This document shows positions 7,298 through 63,822 of a stretch of 64,000 nucleotides of DNA, piece after piece (position 1 is the first letter of the stretch; each line of letters opens with the position of its first letter). Source of the stretch: Octopus sinensis (taxonomy: Eukaryota); NCBI RefSeq assembly GCF_006345805.1, contig NC_043010.1, positions 25,234,001-25,298,000 of the forward strand, written 5' to 3'. The notes below the pieces were generated by a model. It searched no databases. It saw only the letters and a list, made by a program, of their open reading frames with translations, and was not told where the DNA came from. Made by a program: the position numbers and the translations under genes.

Positions 7298-7361
<64 letters not shown>

Positions 7362-8485: not shown

Positions 8486-8486
8486 A

Positions 8487-8559: not shown

Positions 8560-8561
<2 letters not shown>

Positions 8562-14759: not shown

Positions 14760-15500
14760 TACTCAAACTTTTAAGAATGAAGCTACTACACCTGATTCCA
14801 GTGTTTTGTTGCACAGAAGCAGACATACATACACTTTTTAAAGTTAGTTCAAATATCAGTATGACTGAGTTTTGAAAGTGATAATGCACCAGCTACCAGT
14901 GCATTACTGTATTTCCAAAAAATCATGGGAAATCCTTGTTCAGCGTGAATATCTTTAATTACTGGTTTTTTAAAGATTCATTCTTTGGTGCATAAAAACC
15001 GGGAAAATTTCTTCAAACATTTCAGAACTTTAAAGAAACTCATTATCCAGAATTAGAATTAGCAAGTAAACAACTATTGACTCATTCCTCAAGCCAATTC
15101 GTCCCAACCATTCTGCAGATGTTGATGATACTGTGGATATTGATGACACACCAACCGTTGATTTAATCTCTCTTCAGTCACCTGAGATTTGTATGAGTGT
15201 GAGACAAGGTACTAGTGTAGCATCATAGCTCTAACAATACAAAATGACAAGTTATACTCCCTGCCATCACCTCTATCACAAAATACTCATCTGTCGTTTA
15301 CAATGGGTAACAATACTCTTTGATTTTTATACATTTAATGTTAAATAATTTTATAAAATATATTTTTTTAATTTAATATATCTGTACGGTATTTACAGTA
15401 TTTCCTGTAATTTTGTTACTGTTTCTCATGTTAAAAACACACTGTATGGTTCCAATATTGTATATGTACACAATATTAACCTCTATCGTCGGTTTACTGG
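14760..15500 (+). mobile_element. Old pogo/Tigger-like transposon remnant
   Basis: DNAP-like motif near 14880 and a Q-T-I-D-S-F-L-K-like C-terminal remnant near 15070-15100; heavily degraded. Confidence 0.35.
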
Positions 15501-15973
15501 TACAGTCGCCTTAACTTCACATTCTTCTTTTCACCTTATAACGGGAAGTTCAGTTTATGTAGTGAAGCTGCAATGAGACTATTGCTTTGTTGACATATAG
15601 TGACCTCCCTTAGAAACCACAGGACAACTTGAATGACATGTACAGACCGACAAACGGACATACAAAGAGAAAATGCAAGATTAAAATAGAAGACAAATGT
15701 AATGTGTGATAGAGATGTGTGTGTATTTACATAGTTTATGTCTATGTAACATAACACGTGTATACTTTCTCAGCGTCTTATTAGGAATTTTCTGAGTAGC
15801 TTTTGTCGTTAACTGCCAGTAATGTGCAAGTTCTAACGACTAAGTTTCCAGCTCTTTACAGGTGGAAAGAAAGACTTGTAATTGTCATCTTTATCCACTT
15901 ACTTAACTTAGCCACCCACTCTATCTCCATAGAAGTTTATATATTCTTTTGGTGGATTTTTCTGTACCCCATA

Positions 15974-15983
15974 ATGTCAGCAA
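15974..15983 (+). CDS. FANK1: FANK1 paralog a, exon 1 (MSA, phase-1 donor)
   Basis: atg tca gca a|gtaggt; the surrounding ~300 bp aligns with the exon-1 region of paralog b (atg tca gca g|gtaagt, 58219). Confidence 0.7.
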
Positions 15984-16399
15984 GTAGGTCGAGATTATAT
16001 TTTTGTTTTGTTGCTTGTTTATCTTTAATAAGTAGTTCTCTCAGAAGAGAAAGTCAAACCACTGTGATGGTTTACGCTGGTAATTTAGTTCATTTTACAA
16101 CGTGCATCTTTTCAGAAAAGATCCTCCAAGGTATTTTTTGATCGAACCAATGAAAGAGCCTCTATGGCATCACTAGAAATATCACCTCAATTTCCTAATT
16201 ATCACCCTCTGAGTCTTAAAAAAAGGTAGAGGAAGTAAACATTCCGTTATCTTTATTTTTTTATCGAAGCACATTCGTTAATGGGTAATCTTGCCGAACG
16301 CGTTCGTAATTAGAACGTCCTTGACCTCCGGTACTAATCGAAAGTAACCTAACACATTAATCAAAACTGATACAATGGAAATAACACGTTATAATAGTA

Positions 16400-16620
16400 A
16401 TAATCCTTTCTACTATAGGTATAAGGCCTGAAATTTGTGGAGAGGGGGCTAATCATTACATCGATCAGTACTCAACTGGTACTTATTTTATTAACTTGGA
16501 AAGTCGACCGCGGCAGTATTTGAACTCTGAACCTCTGAACATAGGAGAACAGAAGAAACGTCACTAAGCATTTTACCTGGCACGATAACAATTCTGCCTG
16601 CTCACAGTCCATCAGGTCAT
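16400..16620 (-). mobile_element. tRNA-derived SINE fragment
   Basis: Same family as 25540-25745, 28050-28255 (-), 31545-31750, 56190-56520 (-) and 59120-59350; gagttcaaat B-box-like motif on the sense strand. Confidence 0.6.
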
Positions 16621-16624
16621 AACA

Positions 16625-17080
16625 GAAGGGTGTAAGGCTGGTTGCCTTTGAGATCTGCTATATGCTGATGATCTCATTAGCTGATTCTATAAAAGAATTG
16701 AAAATGAAATTCTATATGTGGAAGCAAAGCCCAGAATTAAAAGGCTTCAAAGTTTAAATTAGCAAAGACGAAAGTTTTAGTAAGTTAGAAAGCAGACAAA
16801 TTTGTATCCATATAGAAAATGGCCTTGTTCAATATGAAGGAAAAAAGTAAGCAGAAATTCTATACACTGTAGTTAATGTAAACTGTGGACACAAGAGGTG
16901 CAGTGGTATCACAGAGAGATTAACAAAGAAAATATACTTTGTATGTGGCAGATGCACAGGAGCAATAAAATTTAAGAGTACAAAGGAAATATATTTTCTC
17001 AAATGCCCAGAAAGATTCCTAGACTAGAAGCAGTAACACAAAAAAGTACCCATTACACTTTGTAAACTGGTATCAGCTGT
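16625..17080 (+). mobile_element. Degraded RTE LINE RT fragment
   Basis: ctgctatatgctgatgatctc = LLYADDL; downstream C-x2-C remnants. Confidence 0.65.
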
Positions 17081-17742
17081 AAAAATGATTCCAAAGCAGA
17101 ATACAATCCTCCAAACAATCAGATCTTGTCAAATTTCCAACCAGTGCCAACATGGAAGATGCACAATAAAAGATATTGATGATGATCTTCAAATCACACC
17201 CTGCTGTCTTTTTTAAAAATGAGTCATTGGATAATGTAGCCTAAGTACACTGATTGATAAAAGATAGAATGATTAGATTGGAGTGATTCTGATTTTAGGT
17301 CTGTTCAATCAGAAGCTAAACAACAACAAACTTATTCTCACTAGCTCTATACTTATCAGATAATTATTTTCTTCCTTTGTAGGGTTTTTTGAAGTGTTTT
17401 CGGTGTCTATATTTCTTGATCCTTCATACACAGCTTCTGTGGTAGATGGAATATATAGAAGAGTGTGTATTTCTATGGTGCTAAGCACATTTGTTGGCAT
17501 CCTTTTGTCTCAGGAGACAATGGTAGTTGCACATAAAATAATCCAATAACGAGATTGCCAAAGTGTGTGGCAGCCAACATAGTCTTCCATTTTTTATTGG
17601 TTGACATTACTCCTTTTCAAAGTTGACTTCAGTTGATCTTTGAGCTGCTCTTTGGTTCTCCAGTCATGAGTTGACCATGATGTAGTTGATCATAAGGGAT
17701 TTTCAAGGGAAGACACGAGCTAGATATAAACATTACATATCT

Positions 17743-18993
17743 GCAAGGGGGTACCCAAAAGTAACCAGAAATGTTCTGTGAGACAAGCCCATTGTAGTTC
17801 AGGCTTCCACCACTTGAAGCCACTTGGTGTGATCCTCAGGCATCAGTCTGCCAACCAGTGGCATCATGTGAAGTCGTACTGTCATATTGTGCATCTTTGT
17901 TTTGCAGTGCCTCTTCCCTGTTCATCAATTTTTGCAATGGCTGAAACAAAGGAACAGCATGAATTCTGTTTTCTGCTAGGCAAAACAGCAGCTGAAACAG
18001 TTGTCATACTTCAAACAGCTTACAAGGATGTGACCATGAGTGAAAAACAAGTTTACAAGTGGTTTTCATGCTTTAGGAATGGTCACTTGTTGCTTGAAGA
18101 CCAACCTTGTTCATCTCCTGAATGAATGAATGAAAACATCACGAAAATTCATGATGAACTTGTTGATATGACTGGTGTGTTCTGCAGCTCCTGCCAATGA
18201 ATTTTGAGTGAGGAATTGCAAATGTAAAGAGTTGCAGCAAAATTTGTGCCTTGCTTGTTCAAGGAAGATCAAAAGCAGTCATGACTGAATGTGTGTCGTG
18301 AACTGAAAGAACAGTTTGAAAATTGATCTGGACCTTTATTCAAAGGTCATCACTAATGATAAAAGTGATATGGCTGTGACCCGGAAATGAAACAGCAATC
18401 AAGTCAATGGAAGCATTTAATGTTACCATATCCCAAGAAAGCATGTCAAGTAAAGTCCAATGTCAAGCCGATGATGATTTGTTTCATCAATGTGAAAGGA
18501 ATTGTTCACACAGAATTTGTTCCTCCTGGTCAAACTGTTAACCAGACATTTTACTTGACAATTCTGAAGCATTTGCAAAATGCGGTAAGACGAAAATGTC
18601 CTGAACTGTGGCAAAGTGGAGAGTCGTGGTTTCATCTGCACATGCTGCCTTGAGTGTGAGACAGTTTTTGGTCAAAAATGGCATGACCTGCTTATCCACC
18701 CTCTCTATTCACCTGATCTTGCTCCCTGTGACATTTTTTGTTCCCCCGAACGAAAAATGTCCTTAAAGGAAAACGTTTTGCAGGTATGGAAGAGGTGAAG
18801 AAAATATGACAGAGGTATTAAAAAGCATCATTTTGCAAGTGTTCCAGAACTGCTTTGAACAGTGGAAAACATGTCTAGACTTATGCATTGCTTCATATGG
18901 AGAATACTTTCAAGGCAATAAAAGGGTAAACATGTAAAACTAAGTGAATAAAATAATATTGCAAAATTCCAGTTTCTTTTGGGTATCCCTTCA
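17743..18993 (+). mobile_element. Degraded mariner transposon (second family)
   Basis: TIRs caagggggtacccaaaagtaaccagaa / ttccagtttcttttgggtatcccttca; GKTAAET, FVPPGQTVNQ and HPLYSPDLAPCD remnants. Confidence 0.9.
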
Positions 18994-20411
18994 TAAACAC
19001 TACAGAAATTGGTGTCCTGCCAAAAGCCTTCACCAGGTGGAAGATTGCTAGCTATGGTAGATAATTCTTAACCAAAAATTTCCATAGGGAGAGGTATCAT
19101 TGGTATTGCCTTGTTCTGTCACAAAATTGAACTGCATCATCAAAGCTAATTCTCTTCTTGATTATGCAATAACTCCTGTTACTTTCATAGACTGTTCAAT
19201 CAATTTGATGCCTCTAGAGTTGCTTCTTTTTAAAACATTTTCTTCGCTCTTGTTGCAGTTGATAATGATACTGCTTTGTTGGTCATTAGAAATGACATCT
19301 TTTACTACTTGACTGACTGTAAGACTGACTGTGTCGCTATTTCATTGGATATTTTCAACATCTTAATGATGGTCCCTGATGACCCAGCACTTTCCATGTT
19401 TTTATATACTTAATCACTCTTGTTATCTCTCAATTGTTGTCAACCTCCCTAGCAAGTTCTTCTGTTGAGTTTTCTTGAGGAAGTCCCTCTCTTTTCTATG
19501 CATTCTCTTTATTCAGCAACCTCACATAGTTGTATTTCTATGCCTTTTTCTCCTTTGCATCAATGAGTATATATATATGCATCTTATCTTAAATACAGCT
19601 TTACTTTTTTGTTTAGGTTATTTGCAAATGCAAATGTGGATATCGTTACTATAGTCATCATTTCTTTTATCATCATCATAATCATCATTAAGATATGCTT
19701 ATTTGTCTGATCACTGTATGTGCATGGTTTGGGTGTGTATGTAGATGTGTGTATATCAGAATATATGTGTTTGAGTATACGTGTGCAAGAATATGTTCAC
19801 ACAAATACACACATATATATATAACTTCTCTGGTTATATGTGTGTATTAGTAGATAATTTTGTGTGAGGTCTGTAATTTAGTGAGGATGGATACATGAAA
19901 ATATTACATGCTGGTCTATATATATAGGAGTAAATATGGGTGCATGTAAGGATAAGCATGTATACACAAACGAATATGTGTGTATGTGCATGTGTGTGTG
20001 AATGCACAAGCAAATGAGTGCATGAAAAAAATGTGTATACATGAGGGAATGTTGGTTCATAACTGGTCTGTATCTTGAATTTGTGTGAACACATATATGT
20101 GTGTGAACATATTTAATCCACCCCACTGTACTTCTTGAAAACAGAACTGATACATTAATTAATATAGTCCTAGATGTCTGTAAGAAATAGGAAGATTATG
20201 GTTAGAATTGTTTTGATAATAGCTCAACTCAATTATCTTTGACTTATGATTAAACATTAACATGTCTTCTTTTTCCTTCATTTTCACATTTTTTTCTATA
20301 AGTTGGTTCTTTTTTAACACATGACTCAAATGCTTATATCTCTTCAAATTACATAATTAAATTTCTATCATCTATTTATCAAGTACAACCTCATCCCTGT
20401 CTTTTCTACAG

Positions 20412-20475
20412 ATGAGCTACAAAATTGTGTACAAAACCGAAATCTTTCGGAACTTCAGAATCTGATTATTTCTAG
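20412..20475 (+). CDS. FANK1: FANK1 paralog a, exon equivalent to human exon 4 (N-ELQNCVQNRNLSELQNLIIS-R)
   Basis: cttttctacag acceptor, ag|gtaaag donor; phase 1 in, phase 2 out; aligns to human HLHRAVSVNDEDLLVRILQG (recalled sequence). Confidence 0.75.
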
Positions 20476-21169
20476 GTAAAGAACAAAGTTTTATTTATTT
20501 ATTGTTTCCACTTTCATTGTTATTACTTTATTGCATAAAGGAAGTGTATGGGATGATTAAAGCAGAAATGCCTTTGATGATGTGGCTAAAGAACACCAAC
20601 AGCTCCTGAGAATGAAAAAGTCAGGTATCTGGGTTGATGGTAAAAGGTGGTCAGGTAAATTTGAAGTAATTCTTGTGCAGCTCAACTACAAACTCTGCAA
20701 TTTGAGGTATGATTGTTGTACTGTCATTGTTCTGTATGGTGGTATCTGGATTACAATAATCTTTTCTGAGTGTATTATTTTGTTCATATTATAAGGGAAG
20801 CCTTCTATTGTACATACAATTTATTACAGTGGATATAACTTGTTACAGCTACATTGATTTATCACCTAGCAGAGAATGTAAGTAAAATCATTGTTAAATG
20901 TTATCCTGCAATTTTGTTAATAATGAAATGAATTCATAATTTTCTTACATTAATGGATCTGAGCAGATGAATGGGCTGTTATACCAGTTTATTAACCCAA
21001 AAAACATGTCTGTTGATGAAGCAGATGCACTAGCTGATTGGTCTAAATTGTGATGTTGTAGCCAGGTTTGTTGATACCAGCCTGTCTCATGATAGATGGT
21101 TCTTGACAAAAGCAAACTATCAATTTTTGGATCAATATTTGAGCTATTTAGTCATTCTTGTTATTATAC

Positions 21170-22157
21170 CATACGTATACGGCAGTGAAACATGGGCTGT
21201 AACTGCTGAGGATATGTGTAAGCTCGCACGGAATGTACCAGTATGATCCGATGGATGTGTAATATCAGTGTGCATACTCAACAGAGTGTAAGTACCTTGA
21301 GAGAAAAGTTGGAACTAAGAAGCATTAGATGTGGTGTGCAAGAGAGACGACTGCGTTGGTATGGTCATGTGGTGAGAATGGATGAGGATAGCTGCGTGAA
21401 AAAGTGCCTCACCCTAGCCGTTGAGGGAACTTGTGGAAGAGATAGACCCAGGAAGACCTGGGATGAAATGGTGAAGCATGACCTTCGAACATTAGGCCTC
21501 ACCAAGGAAATGACTAGTGACCGAGACCTTTGGAAATATGCTGTGATCGAGAAGACCCGGCAAGCCAGATGAAACCATAACCCGTGGCCTATGCCAGGAG
21601 CATAACCAGCCCACTTATGCGTAGCTTTTCCTTCTTTGGTCACTAAGCTTTGCTTGTGAAGACCTGTTATGGCAAGTGAAATCAAAATCATTTCGATGAC
21701 TGGCATCTGTGCTAGCGGGGTGCAAAGAGCACCATACGAGTGTGATCGTTGACAGAGAGGCTATTCGAGTATGATCGTTACCAGCGTCGCCTTACTGGCA
21801 CTTATGCCTGTGCTAGTAGGGTGCCAAGAACACCATCCGATTGTGATCGTTGCCAGAGCAGCCAACTGGCTTCCGTACCCATGGCATGTAAAAGGGCACC
21901 ATTCGAGCATGATCATTGCTTCACTGGCACCTCTGTCGGTGGCATGTGTAAAAGATTCAAGCAAGGTCATTGCCAGTACCGCCTGACTGGCCCCCGTGCA
22001 GGTGGCACGTAAAAAGCACCCACTACACTTTCAGAGTGGTTGGCGTTAGGAAGGGCATCCAGCTGTAGAAACTCTGCCAGATCAAGACTGGAGCCTGGTG
22101 CAGCCATCTGGTTGCCAGCATGGAAAACGGACGTTAAACGATGATGATAATGATGAT
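21170..22157 (+). mobile_element. RTE LINE 3' fragment in a FANK1a intron
   Basis: ORF 21243-21572 QERRLRWYGHVV; same 3' UTR and gttaaacgatgatgat tail as 1-1119. Confidence 0.88.
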
Positions 22158-22447
22158 ACTAACAAGAGATATTTGTTACAACCAAACTTCCTACCTATTG
22201 TCTTTAATATTTGAGACCACATTTTGTTTTTAAGTTCTGAAATCTTATAATTCTTGTAAAATTGACAAAATGCCTTGTCTAGAATGCATGAGAAGTGGGC
22301 AGAAGTTTATTACTTTTCCTTTTAACACTGTGAACCTTGAATTAAACACCAGCCTTTAAGAATCATTCTAAGGGGCAATTGGGGAAATATATTTCTATGA
22401 CTCAAGTTAAAAATCATTGATTCTTTGTAAATGAATGATAAGGATTA

Positions 22448-23372
22448 TGAGGATGTTGAACAGTGATGGTGATGAAGCATCTAACTATTTTCCTGTCAAA
22501 ACATGGGAAAAATCTTTTGGGTGGAAGCTGTTACCACCCTTCCTGAGCATGCATGAAAATTTCACACCAATAAGCTGTGTCAGTTCCTGGCTGTTGTGCA
22601 TAGAGTACAGACATGTAATGCTCATTTGTCAGATTTTTGTCTTCACACAAGATGACCAAATGCATTGAGCAGAGATATTGCATCATGTTTTGCCGAAGGC
22701 TTGGTGATATTCAAACTCAAACCATCCAGAAGATTCAGCAGGCCTTTGGTAATGATGCTATGGGCAAAATGAAGATCAAGGAGTAGTACAACTGCTTCAA
22801 ACATGGCCACATCTCAGTGGAGAGTAATGTATGCTCAGGCAGGCCATCCACGAGCTGAAATGAGGAGCTGATTGAGAAGATTTGGCAAATAGTCATTGAA
22901 GACCATTGTGTAACAATCCAGTTGGTCACAAAATGGGAATAAGCACAGGATCAGTGCATTCCATTTTAATGAAGGATCTGTGCATGTGGAGAGTATTGGC
23001 AAAATTTGTCCCCAAAGTCCTAGCAGAGTAGCAGAAGCAACTCCACATCCTGGAAATCGTTCAGGACATGCTGGACTGTGAAAACCATGACCCAGACTTC
23101 ATGAAGACCATCATCACTGGTGATGAAACATGTGTTTATGATTTCTGTTCAATGCATTTGATCAACTTGTAGGAATACAAAAATTCAATGAGTTCACACT
23201 ACATGTCTGTACTCTAGGCATAAAAGCTGGGAACTGATACAACCTATGGGTGTTAAAATTTTCACACATGCATAGAAAGGGTGGCATTACCCTTCCACCC
23301 AAAGGATTTTGCTGGTGCAGCATTAGTTTTAGCAGGAAAAAATAAAGCTAGATACTTTTTGAACATACCTCA
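22448..23372 (+). mobile_element. Internally deleted mariner-type element with long TIRs
   Basis: TA-flanked ends tgagg.atgtt / gaacatacctca; transposase remnants (GRPST, ITGDET); same family as 28449-28944. Confidence 0.7.
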
Positions 23373-23532
23373 TATAATGATGATCATCATAATGTAGGCA
23401 ATAATGAATAATGACAATGATAGTGATGATTTAAAAAAAGAGCAATGAAGAATGATGATAATAAATAATAACAATTATCAATCATGAAGTTGTTGGTTAT
23501 GTACTATAACAATTTTCCATAATGTGTTACAG

Positions 23533-23607
23533 AAAGGTCTCAGTTGATATACCACTTGATCAAGGTCTAACTGCATTAATGATTGCAACAAAACGGAGTG
23601 ATATTGA
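23533..23607 (+). CDS. FANK1: FANK1 paralog a, ankyrin exon (KVSVDIPLDQGLTALMIATKRSDI-E), 75 nt
   Basis: ttacag acceptor, ga|gtaagt donor; aligns to human [24 protein letters not shown] (recalled). Confidence 0.9.
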
Positions 23608-26241
23608 GTAAGTACTCTCTCTCTCTATATATATATATATATGTACACACACACAGTTTTATGATGTGAAGTGATATAACAAAATAGATAAGATACAAAA
23701 CTACCAGCTCTTAATTTTTTTAGTTTAAACCCACTTCAGAAATTTCTCTCAGTTTACCTAGATGTCAGAAGTAGGAACCAGATCATACACAAATGTTACT
23801 AATACCTAAGATAGACTGATGTCATGAAACCAAAAATAAATAGTAGAATTTAAAAGATACTGTAAGCCTTTGAAACATTTACACTTGATAATTATAAAGT
23901 TTTGTGGTGTATATAAAATCTTTTGATAATGGATAATGCTTTGTGGTTATGGTGTGTATAATGCATTGCGATTATAGTTAAATGTATACAATGTTATATT
24001 TTGTCTATATAAAGTATTTTAGTTATTGCATATTTGCCATTATGAAGTGTAAATATCCTGTAATTATGATGTGTATAATTGCCTTGCAAGTATGGTGTGT
24101 ATAAGGTATTATGATAAATGTGAATGTGTGGAACATATAATGTATTTATAGTATGTGAAAGGTTTTGTTGTTAAAGGATGCATTTCCTGTCACTAACAGG
24201 TAAAGATTAGTGACAATAAATGTATTCAGTTATAAATAGTGCCTTAAGCCTTCATCCAATTCATGTCAGCTTGGAAAAAAAAGACAGAAAACTGATGATG
24301 ACAACAACAATGGTAATGTAACAATGATGATAGTACAGATGGTATACATGTGTGTGTGTGTGTTTGTGTAATATTGTGGTTATGGTGAATATAATGTATG
24401 GTTTATGTTAGGTATTTTAGCTATGGTGTGTATAATAACATCTCATGGCTATGAATGTATAAGTATTGTGGTTATGATGTGTATAATGTTATGTTGTTTT
24501 GGTCTGTATAAAGTCTTTTAGTTACAGTGTATGTAAGGTTTTGTGGTTTTGATCTGTGAAATTTATTTTTTTATGAACTGCTTTGGTGTATATGAAGTTG
24601 ATGAATAAGATGAGGTCATGTAAGGTATATAACAATATCTTAACATGTTAATTCTTATCATAGATATAACTTATATTATGTTGTATATGTGTGTGTGTGT
24701 GAGAGCGAGTATGTTTGTGTGTAAATATGTGATTTTTATTAAGTATTAGTACTTTTATTAAGTATTATACACATTCTTATAGTATGTATAAAAATTATAT
24801 TGTTAATTTTATCTGCTGGTATCCATAAATTCATGTGATGTATTTAAAGTCTGGTGACATGCATAAAATATATACAGTCTTTGTATAATGATTAATGATA
24901 CACATAATCTTACAATGAATATAAGGTTTTATATTGCATAAAGTTGACTGATAGTTCATAAAATTTTTATAGAGTATTAACTTGAATTTGCCATGTAATT
25001 CAGATCTTATTCAATTTGTCATATAGATGAAAACTAGCCTTAAGGAAATCTGGATCGAGTTTTAACAGAATAAATCTTAACATCAGATTTGACAATGAGT
25101 GCTCCAGTTGTTCAATTTTTGGAACTATGTCCTTACTGAAAAGATGCAACTATCTGAGTATTTCACAAATGTACTTCAACGAAATTCTGAATCAGTGTGA
25201 CACTGTAAACAAGACTGGCGCTTTGAGTTTTAGATATAAACTATCCAATGAGTTACCACATGATTTTCCATCTATTCAATTTTATTCACAAGGCTTGAGT
25301 TGGCTTGATGCTATAGCAGAAAATACTTTGACCTGAACCTAAGACTTCATGATTACAAAACAAACTTTTGGGCCAGTTAGTCATATATGAGTAGTTATCA
25401 AGATGGCACAAAAAAACCTGTTTACTTTTTAAAAAAATTGATTTTAGTTGATGAATACTGTTGCTAGCCATCTTAGAATTTCTTTTTATGGAGAAGAATG
25501 GTGGATGACAATAAGTAGAGCAACAAATTAAATACCTGGGTGGCCAGATGGCCAGCTAAAATACTCCATGGCATTCCTCCAATTTTACATTCTGATTTCA
25601 AGTGCCCCTGAGGTTGACTTTGCCTTTCTTCCTCTTGCGGTCAATAACGAAACTACCAGTTGAGCACTGGGTTCAATGTAATTGACTAGACCCTCCCCTC
25701 AAAGTTGCTGGCTTTGTGCAAAAAATTAAAAAGAATTATTTATTTATGTCCCTTGGTATTGTATTGAAATCCTATTTCAAGACGGATGCCTTTATCATTC
25801 ATCTGTCCAAGGTAAATATAATTTGTAGTTATTAGAAATTAATATTTAGTCAGATAAAGTAGAGCAGTGCCCATAACCCTTGCTAGTCCTCCTTGACTAT
25901 GATCTAGAATGTTTGTATGCAATAAATTTAGTCCTATATATATTTGTGAGCAGTACTATAATGTAGAGCATAGCTGAATTTTGTAGAGCCTTAGTATCAT
26001 AAAGACTGTTCCACTAGCCCTGGTACTTAACAGGTACATATTTTATCTACCCTGGAATACTTGAAAAATGGAATACAGTCTTGCAAGCTTGAACGGAGAG
26101 TATAAAAGAATTTCTCTAAATGTAGTACGTATTATTTAATCAGCATCATGTAACGAGTTTGTAATTCACTGTCCTTTGGTATTTTTTTTATGTTGCTACA
26201 GCAACTATACATATCTTGAAATATTTCCCTACATATTTCAG

Positions 26242-26307
26242 GATTATGGAATTACTGTTGTCCTTGAATGCATCTGTCACTGTTAAAGATGAGTCAGGAA
26301 AAACAGC
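26242..26307 (+). CDS. FANK1: FANK1 paralog a, ankyrin exon (IMELLLSLNASVTVKDESGKT-A), 66 nt
   Basis: tttcag acceptor, gc|gtgagt donor; aligns to human [22 protein letters not shown] (recalled). Confidence 0.9.
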
Positions 26308-26589
26308 GTGAGTATTTAAAATCTAGTTTTATTTATTCAACAATAACAAGGGAAGAAGGACAATGATTGGATGACTGCATTTTGTGTCTTGACTTATTAA
26401 TAGCTAGCTATTTTCTTTCACTAGATTTTTTCATCTCTGTGGTAAAATGCTAAATCAGAATAAGGCAATATTATTTTCCAAAGGTACAAGGTAGAATAAC
26501 ATAAAACATTTGTTTTCCATGACTCTGTATGTGTGTGTGCGTTTTCATATCACTTATATATATATATATATATATCATCATCATCATCG

Positions 26590-26940
26590 TTTAATATAAG
26601 ATTCCAATACGTTGCGAGTAAAATTCAACAGTATCTAAAAATTTTACTTGCAAGGTATTGGAAAGATTTTACTCACAAGGTATTGGAATCTTATATGTAT
26701 ACCATTCTGCCTAAATAATGAATCTACAAATGCAATATCCTTGCAATTCTCACATCTATTTTCATTACTCCACTTCACTCTCTATTTTATATCATATCTA
26801 AATTAACTATTGCTTAACCATTTACTCACACCATCTCCGATGAAGGGATATAATAAATATCCTGGAAACAGCTGTAAGACCTTCTATTTATAAATGTTCT
26901 AAAATCTTCACAGCCTTGGTTTTTTATCTCTTTCTGAAAA
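26590..26940 (+). mobile_element. Penelope-like terminal fragment with hammerhead-like motif (26834-26879)
   Basis: tct-CCGATGA-agggata-taataaa-tatcctg-GAAA-C-AGCT-G-TA-aga. Confidence 0.6.
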
Positions 26941-27348
26941 AAAAATATATATATATATATACATACACACACTGGAATATTTTTAAGTACTATAACAGAA
27001 ACTAATACTTGACTAAAATTTTGTAAAAAAAATTAAACTTGAATTAAAATTTAAAATTAAATGAAATTCAAGTGATTCTATCACTTAGAAAAATTATTTT
27101 AAAACTGAAATTCAAACTTAGGGTAAAATTTATTGTGTTTTAAAAAAATCAAATGGAAATGTGAATTTCAAATTGAAATGAAAAAGAGTTTTCATTTTAA
27201 ATTTTGAATCTTCCTTCTACTCCGTCTTACCCTCTCAGTACAGTTTTCTTTTTAAATATCTCAGCTTTATTAATTTAAAATTATAAATAAAAAATGATAA
27301 AAATTTATATGCTAAATAATTTTTTTCCCTATTTTTTTCCCTATTCAG

Positions 27349-27563
27349 TTTAATGCATGCTTGCATCTGTGACAATCTTCAAGCTGCAAAGGTCCTGCAT
27401 AGAAATGGTGCACCTTTTGAAGATTTTGATTTCGGTGGATCTAGTCCACTACATCATGCTGTTGACAGTGGCAGCTGCGAGATCATATCGTGGATGATAA
27501 GGGTTGGAGCAGATGTGGACATTCGAGACAAAAATGCTGCTTGGACTCCACTGATGCGATGTG
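27349..27563 (+). CDS. FANK1: FANK1 paralog a, ankyrin exon (LMHACICD...WTPLMRC), 215 nt
   Basis: attcag acceptor, g|gtaagt donor; GGSSPLHHAVDSG and WTPLMR align with human GGCTALHWAADGG and GWTPLMR (recalled). Confidence 0.95.
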
Positions 27564-28448
27564 GTAAGTTCTAAGTGTAGTTTGATTCCTTTTATTCTTT
27601 TCAAAGTATTGTAAAACATGTGAGGATAGGTTGTTCATGTGTGTGCAAGTGAGAGTATACACATGTGCATAACAGTAGAATTTAAGAATTACAGGATTAC
27701 ACCTACTTCATTCAGAATTGCAGAATTACATCTACTTCATTCCATTAGACATTTGTATGCTCATCAAGAACTGTGGTGTATGATCATCAAACGATGCACA
27801 AACAAATGTAAAGATGGCCATCTTTGTATTCATTAGAGAATCATAAATAAAACAAGTTCAAAGCTGCTATTACTATCTAGAAAAATTTCTATATTTGATA
27901 TAACCACAATTGCTTCTATAAATATGGTAATGTTTAGTTGCAGAAACAGAAATTCATGCTAGTAATAATATGTTAAACACATATTTCCCAATATCTTCTA
28001 TCATCATCTTGATCATTATAGAAGAAAAAAATGAATGTGTAAATAATAATAAGGGTTTTATATTTTGGCACAAGGTCAGCAATTTAAGGGAGGAGGTAAG
28101 TCAATACCAACCCCCAAGGTTCAAGTGATACTTGTTTTATAGACCCCAAAAGAATGATAGGTAAAGTCAACCTAAGTGGCATTTGAACTCAGGACAGAAG
28201 AAATACTGCTAAGCATTTTGTCCAGCAGGCTAATGATTCTGATAGTCTGCTGCCTTATAAATAATAATAATAATAATAATAATAATGACACTAATATGGT
28301 GCTTATTGTAAACAGTGCTCAGTGCACTACGACTCATCAGAAAAGGTTAAATAAGAAGATGGAAAGACAGCAATGGAAGCTAGAAAGACATACAGAGACC
28401 ATAGAATAAAACAGAAAAAGATAGAAAAGTGAACAGTAAATAGGTGTA

Positions 28449-28944
28449 CAAGGTGCATTCAAAAATTATCTACCTTTTTTTTCCTGCCAAAACTAATGTT
28501 GCATGGGCAAAATCCTTTGGGGAGGAGATGACACTACCCTTCCTGCACAAATATGAAAATTTTTGTGCTGGTAGACCATATTGGTCCCTGGCTATTATGC
28601 CTGGAGTACAGACATGTAGTGTGCACTCATCAGATTTTGATTTTCACACAAGATGATCAAACACGTCGAGCAGAGACCGTAAACTCATGTCACCTCACCA
28701 GTGATGACAGTCTTCATGAAATCTGGGTCATGGTTTGCACAGTCCAACATGTCCTCAGCGATTTCCATGTGGAGTTGCTTCTGTTGCTCCACAGTATCTT
28801 GGGAATGAATTACAGCCTACCAGTGTAAAAATTTTCTTGCATCCACAGGAAGGATAGTGTCACCTCCCACCCAAATTATTTGGCTCATGCTACTTTAGTT
28901 TTAGCAGGAAAAAATAAAGTGGGATACTTTTTGAATGCATATCA
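28449..28944 (+). mobile_element. Non-autonomous mariner-type MITE with ~100-bp TIRs
   Basis: TA-flanked; inverted arms 28449-28545 and 28845-28944. Confidence 0.75.
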
Positions 28945-29498
28945 TATTGAACTATTGATATTAGAATGCCTAAATCCACTTCATTTCAGTGGTACACTTT
29001 ATGTATGTATTTGTTTATTAATTAGGGAATGAGGTTCAGAACTCTTGGACATTATAAACCCACTCAGATTAGTGAGGTTGATGTGGTTAATGTTACTTTG
29101 AACTTCTGTTGATTTAAGAATCCTTATAAAGTGAACTTCTGCTATCCTGTGGCCAACAAAATTGGAATATCTCACAAAAATATTGATTTTATAAATTGCA
29201 AACAGTATTTCTTTCATTGAAAAACTAAAAATACATCAATAGCATTTCTTTATTTCAATGTTTAGCAATTTTATGATGTAAATCTCTGTCGATCATATAG
29301 ACTATGTTCAATTTAGGTTTGTACTCCATATTTTCACATTTTTCTTAGTTTTAGATAATGGCTTTTATGAATCTCATGTTTTCAAGTGTGAAGTATAATG
29401 GAATTTTGGCATCTACACCTCACTATATATACATTAGGCTATATTATATAAGATTCAAGAGTGTAAATTTGGTTGACACAAGAATTCTTTAAGCTATA

Positions 29499-30893
29499 TA
29501 CTGAACTGCAAAATAAATGCAATTTTATATGGTAAATTCTGAAAATTTATTTCAGGGATGTAAGTGTAAATATTCCAAGACATGGTTTAAGGCAGAGATC
29601 CAAATTGCAGGTAACCTTTCAACTTTCCCTGAAACAAGACACCAAAACACATGTGCATCTCGTGGAGGTTATGGGTGTAAAAATCAACTTAAACCGCATT
29701 CCTGGTATTCGTAATTTGGACACATCAGGATTGTCAGCAGCACAGAGGGAACAAGCTATCAGCTGATTACAAGCAGGGCTGCATGCTCTGGTTGTTGTGA
29801 AAAGCTTACAATGTCCATGTCAGCACCATCTATTGCCTGCAACAGCGATACAACAACAACAACAGCACTGCAGACTGTGCCCCCAGGTGACCATGTTCAG
29901 GCAGGACCGCTTCATCCACCTGCAACAACTCCGTGATCACTTCAGACTGGCCAGCGTGACAGTTCACAAGACCATTATCACTGGACAGAGGCCCATCAGC
30001 GATGACATGGTACGACATTGACTGGCCACCAACAACCTGCGTTGCTGTCATCCTGCTCGAAGGCCTGCCCTCACCACTCACCACTGTCAGGTATGACTAC
30101 AGTGGGCTACATAGCACCGACATTGGTGGCATCAACAATGGAGGTCAATAGTCTTCTCTGATGAGAGCCAGTACTGCATTTCCACCGTGAATAGCAGAGT
30201 GAGGGTGTGGCGTAGGAGGGGTGAACACTACAGAGATGCATGTCATGGGGAGAGACACGTGGGGTGGCCAAAGCATCATGGTTTGGGGTGCTGTAGGCCT
30301 GAATCAGAGAATTGGGCTCCTTGTGTTCCAAATTGTTGGTGCAGGCAGAGGGAGTGGCATCACAGCACAGTGCTACATTGACCAGATCCTAACACCTCTC
30401 ATCATGCCCTTCTTTGCACATCACCATAGCTACGTGTTCCAGGAGGACAATGCTCCTTCCCACACAGCCAGGGTCATCATGGACTTCCTGCATCAGCACA
30501 TCAGCCCAGGTTTGAACCCAATTGAACACCTAAGGGATGAAATCAAGAGACGGCTGAACCAGGTTGTCACAAGGCCGATAACTCATGTGTAACTGTAGGC
30601 AGCTTTCCTCAGGGTATGGGCACAGGCTTTTGTGAACCACCTCATGCACTCCATGTACCGACGGTGTATGTCCATTTTGAACACACAGGGAACATGGTAT
30701 TGAATACGTCACGCCCTACAATCTCGATGTACTGGATCCACCCACTACCAGAACACATGACAACGACCCATAGACTGTGGTCAAAGTACATCCAAGAATT
30801 TGACTTTATCAGATTTATCAAAATTTATCCCTGACATAATGAAATTAAAACATATTTCAGTTACACGTCTCGCATTTCTTTTGCAGTTCAGTG
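29499..30893 (+). mobile_element. Degraded Tc1-family (DD34E) transposon
   Basis: TIRs (t/c)actgaactgcaaaa(t/g)aaatgc with TA flanks; VFQEDNAPSH and LNPIEHL motifs. Confidence 0.9.
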
Positions 30894-31544
30894 TAGATAT
30901 AAAATCTCTACTTAATAAATTGTCAAGCAAACAAAGGAAATAATGATAATTATCACACTCAACTAACTGAATTATTGTGTGTGATTGTGTGAATTAGGGA
31001 AGAAAACATCAACACATCAATTGAAAAGTAAAACCTAAATGTGTGGAACCTGTAGTTTTTGAGTTTGCACATGATATTTTAGTATACTGTGATGTCCTCT
31101 CTAGTTGTCCACAAATCTACCATTTATTATTATTAGTGTTATTTTTAGAATGGATGATATATGGTAGAATTGATAGAGTACTAGATAAAAATGCCTTACA
31201 ACAATTTGTTATGTGTCTTTATATTCTGAGTTTAAATCCCACCAAGAATTATTCTGATTTTCATCCTTTCATGAATCAGAAAGCAATCAAGTACTAAAGA
31301 TAAACTGATCAACAATGACCAACCCAACCCCATTGTCTGCTTTTGATAAAAATCATTTAATCAATGTAGCAATAGACTAATATGTTCTCATATCCCGTCA
31401 TGCACTGATTTCAGATAGCAATGGGGCAAGCTTTGGCTTTTATCCATTTGGGATTAGAAAGATAAATCAGTCAAATCTGGGTTCAATTTCAACTATACAT
31501 CTCAAAATGTGGACATGTGCCAATGTTAGATATTATTATTATTG

Positions 31545-31750
31545 CACAGGTTGGCAGAACCATTCAAGCATTAAACAAAAATCCTTAAAATATTTGTTCA
31601 GGTCTTTATATTCTATGTTTAAACCCTGACAGGGACAACTATTCCTTTCATTCTTTCAGGGCTGATAAAATAAAATACTTGTCAATAGCTGGATCGATAT
31701 AATATGATTAACCTCTCTTCCAGTTTCTGTTCTTTTACCTAAATTAGAAA
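31545..31750 (+). mobile_element. tRNA-derived SINE
   Basis: tggcagaa A-box-like and tgtttaaac B-box remnant; family body as in the other copies. Confidence 0.55.
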
Positions 31751-32747
31751 TTATTATTGTTGTTGTTGTTGTTATTTACATTATTGTTGCTTTGTTTTAT
31801 ACAAGCTGTTCTAGGTTTTGCTCAGAGACCTCAAGTAATACCAAGTTGGATGTTTCATTATGGATGTCATTTATTATTAGCAATGACTTGTATATGTGAA
31901 AGAGACCAAGAACTAAGATTCTGTTAAATTTGTAATATTTCAGTTAGAGTTTTAAGAGAATCAAATTTCTGGTTTGTACCTATATTAACATCAGTTGTAG
32001 TTAGGTTGATTTAATAATTTAACCTCTTACCTCAAATCTCAGGCCTTTTGCATATATAGAATGTTAAAGCAATGAATTGACAGGAGCAGTATATACTACA
32101 AACTAAATACATTTTAATATTTCTTGACTTCTGTGTTCCAACCTCACTGAAGATTTAAAGTTTTTACTGAAACATTCCACTAGCATTCCTAATTTTTCAA
32201 GAGTGAATGTATTCTATTTCTATTGGACCACTAGTATTTTTGCCCCGGGTAATTTTTCCAAGAAAGGACTTACAGCACATCATTGTATGTGTAGCAGCAG
32301 CACCATTCCAAATTCAGGAGTTGTATTCCATTATGAATCTTACTTGTGCTTTGCAGAGAATCAGCAGCTTATCAGAACAAGTATTTTCTGGAACTGAAGA
32401 GCAAGTCTTGACTTTAAAATGCAGTTGTAACTATGTTATCTGTTGACAAGAAAGTTCATCAGAGGTTATGAGGCTTTGTATTTGTGGCAACTTTAAGGAT
32501 TTTAATTACCTGTTGTACAAGACTTGAGAGGGTGACATATAAAATTGTATGCTAGAGATGTGCAGTGATTGTGTCTTAGTGTTGTTGAAAGAGACAAAAT
32601 TTTTATATCCCTATTGAAATATTTGCACCCACGAACATCTTTTAGTAGGAAAACTGAATACATTAACTGAGTTTCTATTAAGGAATTCATACGTATGGAT
32701 TGACATGATGTATTCAGTGTTCTGTGTTTTCTTTTTTTTTTTCTCAG

Positions 32748-32920
32748 CTTCTCTTTCTGGTAACAAATCAGTTGCTAAGACATTGATCTTCGATGGAGCT
32801 AATATTGATCTCAGAGACAATGATGGAAAAACCTGTTTAATAATTGCAGTCATGAATGATCATGAACAATTAGTAGAACTTCTCTTGGAGAGCAACGTCA
32901 ACGTCACAATATTAAATAAG
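32748..32920 (+). CDS. FANK1: FANK1 paralog a, ankyrin exon (A-SLSGNKSVA...GKTCLIIAVMNDHEQLVELLLE...LNK), 173 nt
   Basis: Long polypyrimidine tract + cag; aag|gttagc donor; aligns to human SGNQRVASLLIDAGANV...[21 protein letters not shown] (recalled). Confidence 0.95.
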
Positions 32921-34366
32921 GTTAGCGGATTCCTGTCTCCTCTATTATTCATTGTAGATCATCATCACTGACATTGTTGATCAATTTTACTAGTCAGACA
33001 AAGTGAACCAAGAATTTTTATGTGCATTGTTTAAGGTTTAGCAAGGGAAAGTGATGTGGCTATGGCCCTGGTAATATTATAATCTGGTTTCAAACAAGTC
33101 GTGATTAAGAGCACCAAGAAATACAAAAACACGGGTTAAAATTGACAGCCAAACTGGTACGATATGAATAATACTGTTAGTAAAAATACATTGGTTCCTC
33201 GTGCAGTTTGTACATGATGATGTGCACAGGAAAAGAACAAAGTACGTTAAAGTCTTCTGCTGACAATTCTCTCTTCTCTGAGAGTAGCTTAGAGGAAATT
33301 CTTTATTTATAGTGGTAGGGTGACTCAAAACACACAATGCTTTTCTGGTCTGGCAAGTAGTCTAAATGGATAACTTAAAGCATCCAATCGGCACAAATGG
33401 GTTTGGTCATGTGACCACTTGCATAAAACAAGTGTAGAAGCTGTTATGAGCCTATTTAAGCTTAAGAAAACCAAATTGTGAATATATACTTGCTACAAAG
33501 GGTAAACAAAATGGCTGTTGTAATTTTCAATTAAACTTGTGATCACCAGGATCAGCCCATACTGTTATGATAATAATAGTGATTATGGTTTCCAAGATAG
33601 GCACAAGGAGAGTAATAATTTCATTCAACTTCCTTATATGGTAAATAGTTTTCTTCCCCTTTTTTTTTAATGAATAAAAATAATAAAGTCAATCCTGGAA
33701 AGAATTGAACTTGAAACCTAAAAGAACATAGCTAAATACTACAAGCCATTTCGTCAGGTATTCTGCCACTCATTGTCTCACTAATAATTAATGCTAGTTC
33801 AAACCAGTAAAAAAATAAGTTATTATTAATAGTTTTGTAAAATAGTGTTGTGTTATGAACTGAGTGTATTAGTTTTGATGCCTTCATAGATTTAGTCATG
33901 CTCCTTTACTTTCTTATCTCAAATCCCATCAAGGTCAAGTTTGTTTTTATTTTGATAAAAAAAAGTACTAATCAAGTATTGGAGTTGATATAATTGATTG
34001 TGCTTTCACTCCTGAAATGTGTGGCCTTATGCTTATATTAGAAATTGTTATTGTGATTGAAGACAGGAGAGGGTGTAAGGGAAGAAATGAATAAACATTT
34101 TTCAGTATTTGGTTTTGTCTCTCAATTCTAGACCTCATGGCATTAACTTTCCCAATGATCCTTTGGGTCTTAAAATATATACCAAAATTAAACTGGAACC
34201 TAGTGGCTCTATGTTCAATAAAATAAATATATTGGGGTTGATCCAGTTGATACATTCTCCTATCCCCTACCAAAAATAGCTTTGTTACTTAGAAATTAAT
34301 ATCAATGTATGAACAACCATTTACACTGGCTTCATTTTTTTCTTTTTCTCTTTCTATCCTTTTCAG

Positions 34367-34411
34367 AGTGGTCGAACAGCATATGAAATAGCAGTTGCCC
34401 TTAAAAAAACT
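34367..34411 (+). CDS. FANK1: FANK1 paralog a, 45-nt exon (SGRTAYEIAVALKKT)
   Basis: tttcag acceptor, act|gtgagt donor; phase 0/0; corresponds to human FGKGVLEMARVFDRQ (recalled). Confidence 0.9.
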
Positions 34412-35011
34412 GTGAGTAGATTTATTGTTCAAGTTAACTTTTGAAAGCAGTATGGTTTATCAGTTTCCTCTTCCTCCTTATTCTTCTTCCCTTTTTCTTT
34501 CTTCTTCTGGTTTTAGGTCAGCCCTGATTCAGTATCAAATTTTGAGAGAATAACTGTGTGATCTGTAGATGGAAAATGTTTTGGATGTGTGTTAACTGTT
34601 TTCATCATTTAACCTGCATTCCAACCATGATTATACCATCTTTTTCTCAGGAACCATATGAACAAAATAAAATAAAAACGGTATCCATTAATATAACCGT
34701 CTTTCTAAAGTCAGAAATGACTGGAATATTCATCTGTAACCACAATGTCTATTACTCAGTGTATCTAGGATTCTATTGTCCAATTATTCATTTTTAAGAT
34801 TTGAATTGATCCCTAATTTCAGCCATTCCATAGATATTGTTTAACCATAGTCAGCCTGAAACAGCAGGTCCATGGTGAAAAGTATTTTGGTTATAAACCA
34901 TCCTTTTTTTTTTGTGTTGTAGACTACTATTAGTTTCCTCTAATTATGGTTTATATTATAAGGTTATAAGTTTATTTTTTTGTTGAAGCCATTTTTCTTT
35001 TCATTTGTCAG

Positions 35012-35098
35012 GCAATAATAAAGATCTTGGATAAATATATTAAAAGTAGAAAGAATAATATTCCTAAGGAGGAGACCAGAAATGTTAGTGTTACATAA
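35012..35098 (+). CDS. FANK1: FANK1 paralog a, terminal exon (AIIKILDKYIKSRKNNIPKEETRNVSVT*)
   Basis: tcatttgtcag acceptor, phase 0; helix plus basic tail like human SVVSLLEERKKKQ (recalled); TAA at 35096-98. Confidence 0.75.
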   Translation, partial: AIIKILDKYIKSRKNNIPKEETRNVSVT

Positions 35099-37673: not shown

Positions 37674-38447
37674 TAAATATATTTTGTTAATTCGTAAACC
37701 TCTATATTTATCAGAATTGTAATGCTAACTAATTCCAGAATCTGGACATGCATTGGGAAAAGACCTTCAGATAATTCTCTGTCTCCATGATGTCATCATA
37801 CCTTGCAATTCAATGTGCTGATACAATGAAAAGAATCAGGCTTTTATCTGCTTGCCTGAAGTCATAAAACAATTTATGTTGTAAGACTATTTTTATCTTC
37901 TAGGATTTCAACAAAACAAATGAAAACAATTCTGACATTCCAGAAGAATCGTTACAATAAAGTTACTTCCTTCACTCATCAACTGCCATTTTGAACTGGA
38001 CATTATTGTTGTTGCTGTGATGTCTTAATCTTCTACATTTTTTTCATTTCATTTGTTTCAGTTTTATACCTTCTTTTTCTTCTTCTGTGGTAATTTTTAT
38101 TTGAGGGTTGGGGAGAGACAAGAGCTTGTGACATTAGTACATAAGCTCTTTTATTATTTCTCCTTCATGTATATAAATAGATACATATGTATGTATATGT
38201 GTGTGTGTGTGTATACACAGCTAAGTAAGATATGGGTAAAAACCTTGTAGAATGCTATGCAAAGCTTGTCCATAGTTATTGGCTACCTGATGTCATCATA
38301 CAGAGGAAATGCTCCTGCTACTGGATAAACATCAGCAATTCCAAAATAATCCTTAGAGTTTATATATAAAACAAAAAAGATGTAAAAATGTATCAAAATA
38401 ATTGTAGTGATTTTAGATAAAGAATGTTATTAGTTCTATTTTCTATC

Positions 38448-58218: not shown

Positions 58219-58228
58219 ATGTCAGCAG
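58219..58228 (+). CDS. FANK1: FANK1 paralog b, exon 1 (MSA-G)
   Basis: atg tca gca g|gtaagt, strong donor; phase 1 matches the exon-2 acceptor. Confidence 0.75.
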
Positions 58229-59669: not shown

Positions 59670-59853
59670 GGAAAACTGAAATCTCAGAGGTCGAAGTGAT
59701 TGATAAAAGCCATTCTACTGTGCATCTTGACTGGTCTTCTTCTCTACTCCAATACAACTACAGCATTCTAAATTACACTGACAGGGTCTACGCAATCTTA
59801 CAGCAAACAGTAGGGAGCTGCGAAGATGAGACTAAATGGAATGATGTATATAT
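59670..59853 (+). CDS. FANK1: FANK1 paralog b, exon 2: FN3 N-terminal half (KTEISEVEVIDKSHSTVHLDW...KWNDVY-I), 184 nt
   Basis: ttcttgtcag acceptor, at|gtatgt donor; SHSTVHLDW aligns with human THHSIELYW (recalled). Confidence 0.85.
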
Positions 59854-63694: not shown

Positions 63695-63822
63695 TGGATA
63701 TGGTGAAAGTAAAATTGTCGGAGACCTTGAACCAAAGCAGGAGTACAAATTTAGAATTCGCTTCCACCGAAATGATGACATTTACTCAGCCTGGTCACCA
63801 GCAGTACAAGTTATTACCGATA
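63695..63822 (+). CDS. FANK1: FANK1 paralog b, exon 3: FN3 C-terminal half (GYGESKIVGDLEPKQEYKFRIRF...WSPAVQVITD), 128 nt
   Basis: tatatgtag acceptor, a|gtgagt donor; aligns to human [21 protein letters not shown]...YSPLVSVST (recalled); gene continues beyond the window. Confidence 0.92.

What the first reader, a model, noticed from the sequence alone, without database searches (positions are those of the whole stretch)
15974..35098. FANK1 duplicate appears to have lost its FN3 domain in frame, leaving an intact ankyrin-only protein
Seen in sequence: exon 1 (phase-1 donor) joins the phase-1 acceptor at 20412. Eight exons (10+64+75+66+215+173+45+87 = 735 nt) give 244 aa with no stop and canonical GT-AG throughout. 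Between 15984 and 20411 I find only SINE, RTE, mariner and simple repeats, with nothing resembling the two FN3 exons of paralog b. Those two exons form a phase 1-1 cassette, so removing them keeps the frame. Inference: after duplication, loss of this cassette produced a retained ankyrin-only paralog that may compete with or modulate full-length FANK1, a testis/ciliated-cell protein in vertebrates.
Basis: partly seen in the sequence, partly recalled or inferred. Interest (0 to 1): 0.7.

Follow-up and report, generated by a model that had tools for sequence, protein, structure and literature searches.

The report
Octopus FANK1 copy without FN3 domain
One of five tandemly duplicated FANK1 genes in Octopus has physically lost its two fibronectin-domain exons yet stays an intact, conserved, ankyrin-repeat-only gene; this is a real but fairly ordinary case of domain loss after duplication, and public annotation already holds it, unremarked.

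Summary
The window is Octopus sinensis chromosome CM016872.1. The eight exons (15974-35098, +) splice GT-AG into a 735-nt ORF of 244 aa, all ankyrin repeats. No FN3 remnant exists in window 1-23500 by protein or DNA search, although the same search finds FN3 exons of other paralogs easily. The O. vulgaris assembly is collinear here and the O. bimaculoides locus also lacks FN3, so this is not an assembly collapse and the loss predates the species split. Exon 1 and its flanks are homologous to exon 1 of paralogs b, c and d. One detail is new. The ANK1 exon lost its ancestral acceptor to a 10-nt insertion and now uses an acceptor 18 nt downstream, which trims the KEPYYG linker in frame. The ORF is intact after dS of about 0.24 on its own branch. 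Between species omega is about 0.5, but exon 2 evolves almost neutrally. Competition with full-length FANK1 is untested. Interest is low to moderate.

The parts
15771..15973 (+). Promoter-proximal / 5'UTR block conserved among FANK1 paralogs A, b, c and d
   Evidence: blastn 15771-15821 and 15927-16052 against the paralog b region. Six-sequence alignment A3 shows invariant motifs such as AACTG.CAGT and CCATA. The part from about 15925 is about 99% identical to O. bimaculoides.
15974..15983 (+). Exon 1 (ATGTCAGCAA, then gtaggt), coding M-S-A plus one base, phase-1 donor
   Evidence: Homologous to b exon 1 at 58219-58228 and to c and d exon 1. Identical in O. bimaculoides, where the called 234-aa gene starts at this ATG (L005:26692).
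15984..20411 (+). Intron 1, the place where the two FN3 exons are missing. It holds a conserved block at 15984-16053, a SINE-like repeat at 16400-16605 and a mariner remnant from about 17947 to 18950.
   Evidence: No FN3 by tblastn or blastn. HTH_48 hit. Repeat copies. Same intron in O. vulgaris. The O. bimaculoides intron is 3.6 kb and also lacks FN3.
20384..20411 (+). Relic of the 5' end of the ancestral 82-nt ANK1/linker exon, now intronic. The 10-nt insertion lies at 20394-20403. The old acceptor AG is at 20382-20383.
   Evidence: Alignment A2 with b and c. Splicing at the old acceptor would read into a TGA. The sequence is conserved in O. bimaculoides.
20412..20475 (+). Exon 2 (64 nt), the helices of ankyrin repeat 1. 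It equals the 3' 64 nt of the ancestral 82-nt exon.
   Evidence: Same length and splice sites in O. bimaculoides, with 9 substitutions (8 nonsynonymous).
23533..23607 (+). Exon 3 (75 nt). Alternative annotated starts are the intronic ATG at 23522 (O. vulgaris model) and M41 at 23579 (O. sinensis XP_036364634/5).
26242..26307 (+). Exon 4 (66 nt)
27349..27563 (+). Exon 5 (215 nt)
32748..32920 (+). Exon 6 (173 nt)
34367..34411 (+). Exon 7 (45 nt)
35012..35098 (+). Exon 8 (87 nt including the stop). An internal donor after 35083 is used by the O. vulgaris model.
37904..37960 (+). Alternative terminal coding exon (DFNKTNENNSDIPEESLQ*) of the 237-aa O. vulgaris model, encoded identically in this window
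58219..58228 (+). Exon 1 of paralog b (ATGTCAGCAG, then gtaagt)
59670..59853 (+). Paralog b FN3 exon a (184 nt, enters in phase 1)
63695..63822 (+). Paralog b FN3 exon b (128 nt, leaves in phase 1)

Best explanation
Paralog A is a protein-coding, FN3-less member of an Octopus-lineage expansion of FANK1. The paralogs are c, d, e, A and b; c-d-e-A are seen contiguous in O. bimaculoides and A-b adjacent in this window. After tandem duplication, a genomic deletion inside what are now 4.4 kb of TE-rich intron removed both FN3 exons, a symmetric phase 1-1 cassette. The next exon lost its original 3' splice site to a 10-nt insertion. It now uses a new polypyrimidine-AG acceptor 18 nt downstream, which removes the FN3-ANK linker (KEPYYG) and keeps the frame. 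The gene keeps the family's conserved promoter-proximal block and its 10-nt ATG exon. It is spliced exon 1 to exon 2 to give a six-ankyrin-repeat protein of 244 aa (234 aa in O. bimaculoides). Shorter annotated forms (204 and 237 aa) probably come from other 5' ends.

Shown here: the anatomy, the absence of FN3 in three assemblies, the age of the loss (before the O. sinensis / O. bimaculoides split), the intact ORF and moderate purifying selection.

Inferred: that exon 1 to exon 2 is the main transcript in O. sinensis, and that the protein acts as a free ankyrin scaffold. Such a scaffold would bind partners of the FANK1 ankyrin domain without whatever FN3 contributes, either as a subfunctionalised copy or as a competitor.
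For: - Gene model verified.
- The window is O. sinensis CM016872.1.
- Best database hits are Octopus FANK1 proteins. The 100% hit is XP_036364634/5, 'FANK1-like isoform X2'.
- Exon lengths match b and c: 10, [184, 128 missing], 82 reduced to 64, then 75, 66, 215, 173, 45.
- The exon-1 region is homologous in A, b, c and d.
- No FN3 remnant was found, with a working positive control.
- O. vulgaris is collinear over window 13452-47945, with 0.36% substitutions and 0 of 792 exonic differences.
- In O. bimaculoides, L005 is collinear with window 3601-23048 at 90-93%, has no FN3, and carries identical exon 1 and splice sites. A called gene with a 234-aa product starts at the orthologous ATG. The length fits: 234 = 30 + 204, where the 204-aa P0069 starts at codon 31.
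- P0001 and P0069 are 'not on record' as longest products, which fits a longer isoform X1.
- The acceptor shift is shown in alignment A2.
- Selection between species: A differs at 17 of 204 residues between O. sinensis and O. bimaculoides with no indel. The neutral yardstick is dS 0.073 (paralog c) or 6.4% noncoding divergence, which gives 31-35 expected changes (P about 0.005 or below, down to 5e-4) and omega of about 0.5.
- Selection since duplication: the ORF is intact although dS on A's own branch is about 0.24.
- Pfam finds ankyrin repeats only in A, and ankyrin plus weak fn3 in b and c.
- In the tree A sits inside the Octopus FANK1 clade (100% bootstrap).
Against: - No transcript data could be examined, so the 15983/20412 junction in O. 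sinensis is supported only by analogy with the O. bimaculoides gene call.
- Database proteins of O. sinensis and O. vulgaris begin in or just before exon 3, and no database protein contains the exon-2 peptide.
- Exon 2 shows 8 nonsynonymous and 1 synonymous change between species, which is compatible with no constraint on its peptide.
- Branch-wise omega for A since duplication is about 0.8, and A has replaced several residues that are otherwise invariant across animals, such as the ANK1 loop G changed to R. Part of its history therefore looks relaxed.
- The between-species omega uses dS borrowed from paralog c, because O. bimaculoides DNA for exons 3-8 of A was not obtainable.
Confidence: 0.8

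Rival explanations
1. The ankyrin-only gene is real, but its main product starts downstream, at M41 or at other 5' exons or promoters. Exon 1 and exon 2 would then be untranslated or rarely used, giving a protein of about 204 aa that lacks ankyrin repeat 1.
For: Two O. sinensis RefSeq proteins (XP_036364634 and XP_036364635) are the 204-aa form. O. bimaculoides XP_014769365 is also 204 aa, from a species-specific ATG in exon 3. The O. vulgaris model starts at an intronic ATG at 23522. Exon 2 evolves nearly neutrally.
Against: - A start at M41 cuts ankyrin repeat 2 in half (alignment A4).
- The O. bimaculoides start codon is ATA in O. sinensis.
- Exon 1, its flanks and the exon 1 and exon 2 splice sites are almost perfectly conserved between species.
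- The new acceptor preserves the frame, and the exon is free of indels while the 28 nt just upstream took a 10-nt insertion.
- The longest O. bimaculoides product (234 aa) starts at exon 1.
Confidence: 0.12
2. Paralog A is a transcribed relic on its way to becoming a pseudogene, and its open frame is just not yet broken.
For: Omega on the A branch is about 0.8, it is the longest branch in the tree, it has substitutions at conserved sites, exon 2 drifts neutrally, and the C-terminal tail differs between species.
Against: With dS of about 0.24 on its branch, roughly eight nonsense changes and many indels would be expected in 735 nt under neutrality, by my own rough estimate. That estimate scales from about 0.15 gaps per mismatch in noncoding DNA. 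None is seen, and all 14 splice sites are intact. The between-species amino-acid divergence is about half the neutral expectation with no indel. There are 0 of 792 exonic differences from O. vulgaris.
Confidence: 0.05
3. The FN3 domain is not lost functionally. It would be supplied by splicing from FN3 exons of a neighbouring paralog or from exons outside the window.
For: In O. bimaculoides the full-length paralog e ends only 4.7 kb upstream of A's exon 1 on the same strand. The FN3b donor and A's exon-2 acceptor are phase-compatible.
Against: - No database protein joins FN3 to A's ankyrin exons.
- In O. sinensis, homology to the paralog e side stops about 12.4 kb upstream of exon 1, and the 16 kb upstream holds only transposons.
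- A keeps its own conserved promoter block and ATG exon.
- Paralog e and the 234-aa gene are called as separate genes.
Confidence: 0.02
4. An assembly collapse or mis-join removed the FN3 exons from the reference.
For: None found.
Against: Three independent assemblies (O. sinensis, O. vulgaris, O. bimaculoides) show the same FN3-less intron.
Confidence: 0.01

Closest known systems
[quoted passage not shown]
   Same: Common descent. A has the same 10-nt ATG exon and the same exon lengths and phases for the ankyrin exons (75, 66, 215, 173, 45). Identity over the ankyrin region is 60-65% to its Octopus paralogs. It sits inside the Octopus FANK1 clade.
   Different: A lacks the whole FN3 domain and the KEPYYG linker. 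It has the longest branch and replacements at sites otherwise conserved across animals. Its C-terminal tail is different and longer.
RefSeq and ENA models of this same gene: XP_036364634/5 (O. sinensis, 204 aa), XP_014769365 (O. bimaculoides, 204 aa), CAI9732681 (O. vulgaris, 237 aa), all named FANK1(-like) isoform X2
   Same: They come from the same locus and use the same ankyrin exons 3-8. They are ankyrin-only.
   Different: They start in or just before exon 3 and omit exon 1 and exon 2. The O. vulgaris model uses an extra terminal exon. None is discussed in the literature; no paper holds both 'FANK1' and 'octopus'.
Generic domain loss after tandem duplication through deletion of symmetric (same-phase) exons
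   Same: A phase 1-1 cassette was removed without breaking the frame, and the truncated paralog was retained.
   Different: Here the loss was accompanied by a compensating 3' splice-site shift of 18 nt in the next exon.

Membership tests
FANK1 family | N-terminal fibronectin type III domain | tested here: not met
   Pfam finds no fn3 in the 244-aa product, whereas b and c give weak fn3 hits. There are no FN3 exons in window 1-23500 or in the O. bimaculoides locus.
FANK1 family | C-terminal block of FANK1-type ankyrin repeats | tested here: met
   Ank_2 E 1e-47. The best hits are FANK1 proteins. The sequence aligns end to end with the FANK1 ankyrin region.
FANK1 family | Descent from FANK1: shared exon-intron structure and phylogenetic placement | tested here: met
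   Exon lengths and phases are identical to b and c for five exons and the ATG mini-exon is homologous. In the NJ tree A lies inside the Octopus FANK1 clade with 100% bootstrap.
FANK1 family | Expression in testis or multiciliated cells, and a role in ciliated-cell differentiation or spermatogenesis (PMC5936064, PMC6486812) | not testable with these tools
   No expression data were available. Only the conserved promoter-proximal block shared with the paralogs hints at similar regulation.
Processed or unprocessed pseudogene | Disrupted ORF or splice sites, with neutral evolution | tested here: not met
   The ORF is intact and all introns are GT-AG. Between-species omega is about 0.5 with no indels. 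Exon 2 alone looks neutral.

The most novel reading that the evidence does not exclude
The FN3-less paralog is a retained regulator. Its free ankyrin domain would compete with the four full-length Octopus FANK1 paralogs for shared partners in sperm or ciliated cells. The fast change of ankyrin repeat 1, the surface next to the lost FN3, would then reflect adaptive remodelling rather than decay.
Probability: 0.15. Interest if true: 0.45.

Novelty: new variant of a known kind. Interest (0 to 1): 0.3.

Why it matters
FANK1 is a conserved two-domain animal protein linked to spermatogenesis and multiciliated-cell differentiation, and the separate roles of its FN3 and ankyrin parts are poorly understood. 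Octopus offers a natural experiment: five tandem paralogs, one of which has run for millions of years on the ankyrin part alone. Comparing its partners and expression with those of the full-length copies could show what each domain contributes. The locus is also a clean worked example of exon-cassette deletion with a compensating splice-site shift. Beyond that it is an ordinary outcome of gene-family expansion, and genome annotation already contains it.

Tried and rejected
- P0001, P0069 and P0006 are not on record as longest products. As a result the O. sinensis isoform X1 and the rest of the O. bimaculoides A gene (exons 3-8 DNA) could not be fetched, and no direct dS for A between species could be computed.
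- My first idea was that the O. bimaculoides protein P0007 (70% identity) was an FN3-bearing orthologue of A. I rejected it: P0007 is paralog c with a skipped exon and a transposon-derived tail.
- I also considered that A lies next to paralog c because of consecutive XP accession numbers. In O. sinensis and O. vulgaris c lies 16-19 Mb away.
Selected pieces confirmed only the mariner, so the 'RTE' label stays unverified.
- TRF found no tandem arrays in intron 1.
- A literature search for FANK1 plus octopus found nothing.
- A human FANK1 sequence recalled from memory served only as a first lead and was replaced by database proteins.
Full report
**What is there**

Every intron is GT-AG. The joined CDS is 735 nt and gives 244 aa plus a stop. 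Exon 1 (ATGTCAGCAA, then gtaggt) leaves one base that is completed by the first two bases of exon 2. Pfam sees only ankyrin repeats in the product (Ank_2 E 1e-47), whereas the full-length paralogs b and c also give a weak fn3 match.

**Source and relatives**

L004, fetched through paralog b's protein, is 100% identical to window 48219-64000. The window is therefore Octopus sinensis chromosome CM016872.1, at about 25.23-25.30 Mb.

The best database hit is 100% identical: XP_036364634/5, 'FANK1-like isoform X2', 204 aa, starting at M41 in exon 3. Its 90% cluster holds a 237-aa O. vulgaris model and a 204-aa O. bimaculoides protein, both ankyrin-only.

Paralog b is the 346-aa P0003. Its exons in the window are 58219-58228, 59670-59853 (FN3a) and 63695-63822 (FN3b). 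Octopus has at least five FANK1 paralogs (A, b, c, d, e). They form one clade with 100% bootstrap, apart from two unnamed transcript-derived relatives, the bivalves, a nemertean and a sea urchin. A has the longest branch.

**Is FN3 really gone?**

- tblastn with FN3 peptides of b, c and d from two species, and sensitive blastn with the FN3 exons plus 150-nt flanks, found nothing in window 1-23500 beyond noise. The best hit had E 0.04 and contained stops.
- The same kind of query finds the FN3 exons of a different paralog (e) at E 1e-14 to 1e-23. A decayed copy of similar age would therefore have been seen.
- The O. vulgaris assembly (L001) is collinear with window 13452-47945, with 0.36% substitutions and the same intron 1.
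- The O. bimaculoides locus (L005) is collinear with window 3601-23048 at 90-93% and also lacks FN3.

Assembly collapse is excluded, and the loss predates the split of these species.

**Is exon 1 real?**

The 10-nt exon and about 200 nt upstream and 70 nt downstream are homologous to the exon-1 regions of b, c and d, while the rest of the introns no longer align. Between O. sinensis and O. bimaculoides the block from about 15925 to 16053 is nearly identical, against 7-10% divergence around it.

In O. bimaculoides a called gene with a 234-aa longest product starts at L005:26692, exactly the orthologous ATG. P0069 (204 aa) begins at codon 31, and 30 + 204 = 234. O. bimaculoides also stops ten codons earlier than O. 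sinensis. P0001 and P0069 are 'not on record' as longest products, which fits a longer isoform X1 in both species.

I could not see transcript evidence directly. The O. sinensis junction therefore rests on this analogy.

In b and c the exon after FN3 is 82 nt; in A it is 64 nt. Alignment A2 shows that the ancestral 5' end is still recognisable at 20384-20411. A 10-nt pyrimidine-rich insertion (20394-20403) and a GGAG to ACAG change created a new acceptor at 20411/20412. Use of the old AG (20382-20383) would run into a TGA. The shift is 18 nt, so the frame is kept and only the KEPYYG linker is removed; the helices of ankyrin repeat 1 remain. The arrangement is the same in O. bimaculoides. The segment upstream of the new acceptor took an indel while the 64 nt downstream did not, which fits use of the new site.

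**Selection**

Between O. sinensis and O. bimaculoides:
- Paralog c gives dS 0.073 and dN 0.019. Alignable noncoding DNA differs by 6.4%, with about 0.15 gaps per mismatch.
- A differs at 17 of 204 residues with no indel. Neutrality predicts about 31-35 changes (P about 0.005 or below, down to 5e-4), so omega is about 0.5. By the same residue-count arithmetic, b and d have similar or slightly higher values over the ankyrin region.

Among paralogs:
- dS is about 0.5.
- Omega is 0.60 for A-b, 0.48 for A-c and 0.32 for b-c.
- A three-way split gives omega of about 0.8 on the A branch, 0.44 on b and 0.22 on c.

A has therefore been relaxed or remodelled. An ORF of 735 nt and 14 intact splice sites after dS of about 0.24 are nevertheless not compatible with neutral decay.

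Exon 2 is the exception. It has nine differences between species, eight of them nonsynonymous, with frame and splice sites intact. Ankyrin repeat 1 is drifting or adapting.

**Alternative products**

The O. vulgaris model starts at an intronic ATG (23522). It also uses a donor after 35083 and an extra terminal exon at 37904-37960, which is encoded identically in this window.

**Context**

- The rest of the window is transposon-derived: a mariner at 2.1-2.9 kb, LINEs at 9.4-12.9 kb and 51.6-54 kb, an LTR retroelement at 46.8-51 kb, and a LINE RT ORF in b's intron 2.
- Intron 1 holds a mariner remnant and a dispersed repeat.
- In O. bimaculoides the order is c-d-e-A. In O. sinensis and O. vulgaris c lies 16-19 Mb from A-b (d seen next to c in O. 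sinensis only), and homology to the paralog e side stops near window 3570.

**Comparison and verdict**

By descent this is a FANK1 gene; by architecture it fails the family's FN3 criterion. Mouse work ties FANK1 to spermatogenesis and multiciliated-cell differentiation (PMC6486812, PMC5936064). Nothing is published on Octopus FANK1.

This is a new variant of a known kind, already present in annotation, and of low to moderate interest.

Noticed in passing
window 1-3600; L005, L002, L003, L006: Octopus has at least five FANK1 paralogs. In O. bimaculoides c, d, e and A lie in tandem within about 70 kb. In O. sinensis and O. vulgaris c lies 16-19 Mb from A-b on the same chromosome (d checked next to c in O. 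sinensis only). Homology to the paralog e side of the O. bimaculoides locus stops near window 3570. This points to a rearrangement breakpoint inside the gene cluster.
   Followed up: partly
window 15925-16053: The block around exon 1, including about 70 nt of intron (TTTATCTTTAATAAGTAGTTCTCTCAGAAGAGAAAG), is almost identical between O. sinensis and O. bimaculoides. It is also recognisable in paralogs b and c. It is more conserved than coding exon 2, and its function (promoter, 5'UTR or intronic element) is unknown.
   Followed up: partly
window 20412-20475 versus L005 30274-30337: Exon 2 of paralog A carries 9 substitutions in 64 nt between the two species (8 nonsynonymous, 1 synonymous). That is more than the flanking intron, yet frame and splice sites are intact.
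   Followed up: partly
window 35083/35084 and 37904-37960: An internal GT donor in the last exon and a downstream 57-nt exon give an alternative C-terminus. The O. vulgaris gene model uses them, and this window encodes them identically.
   Followed up: partly
window 59968-61533 (+): A 521-aa open reading frame with a strong reverse-transcriptase match (E 1e-30) sits inside intron 2 of paralog b, between its two FN3 exons. It may be a young LINE copy.
   Followed up: no
window 46860-50642 (+): There are ORFs with aspartyl protease, RT-like, RNase H and integrase matches in that order, which indicates an LTR retroelement copy. Two diverged LINE copies at 9834-12907 and 51735-53948 are about 67% alike.
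   Followed up: no
L005 10001 (O. bimaculoides paralog e, P0076): The annotated protein of paralog e starts directly in the FN3a exon (MEILAAEV...) and lacks the MSA mini-exon that A, b and c share.
   Followed up: no
protein P0107 (206 aa, transcript-like contig of unknown organism): This is an ankyrin-only protein 48% identical to Octopus FANK1 c. It may be a partial sequence or another FN3-less FANK1 form in a different animal.
   Followed up: no
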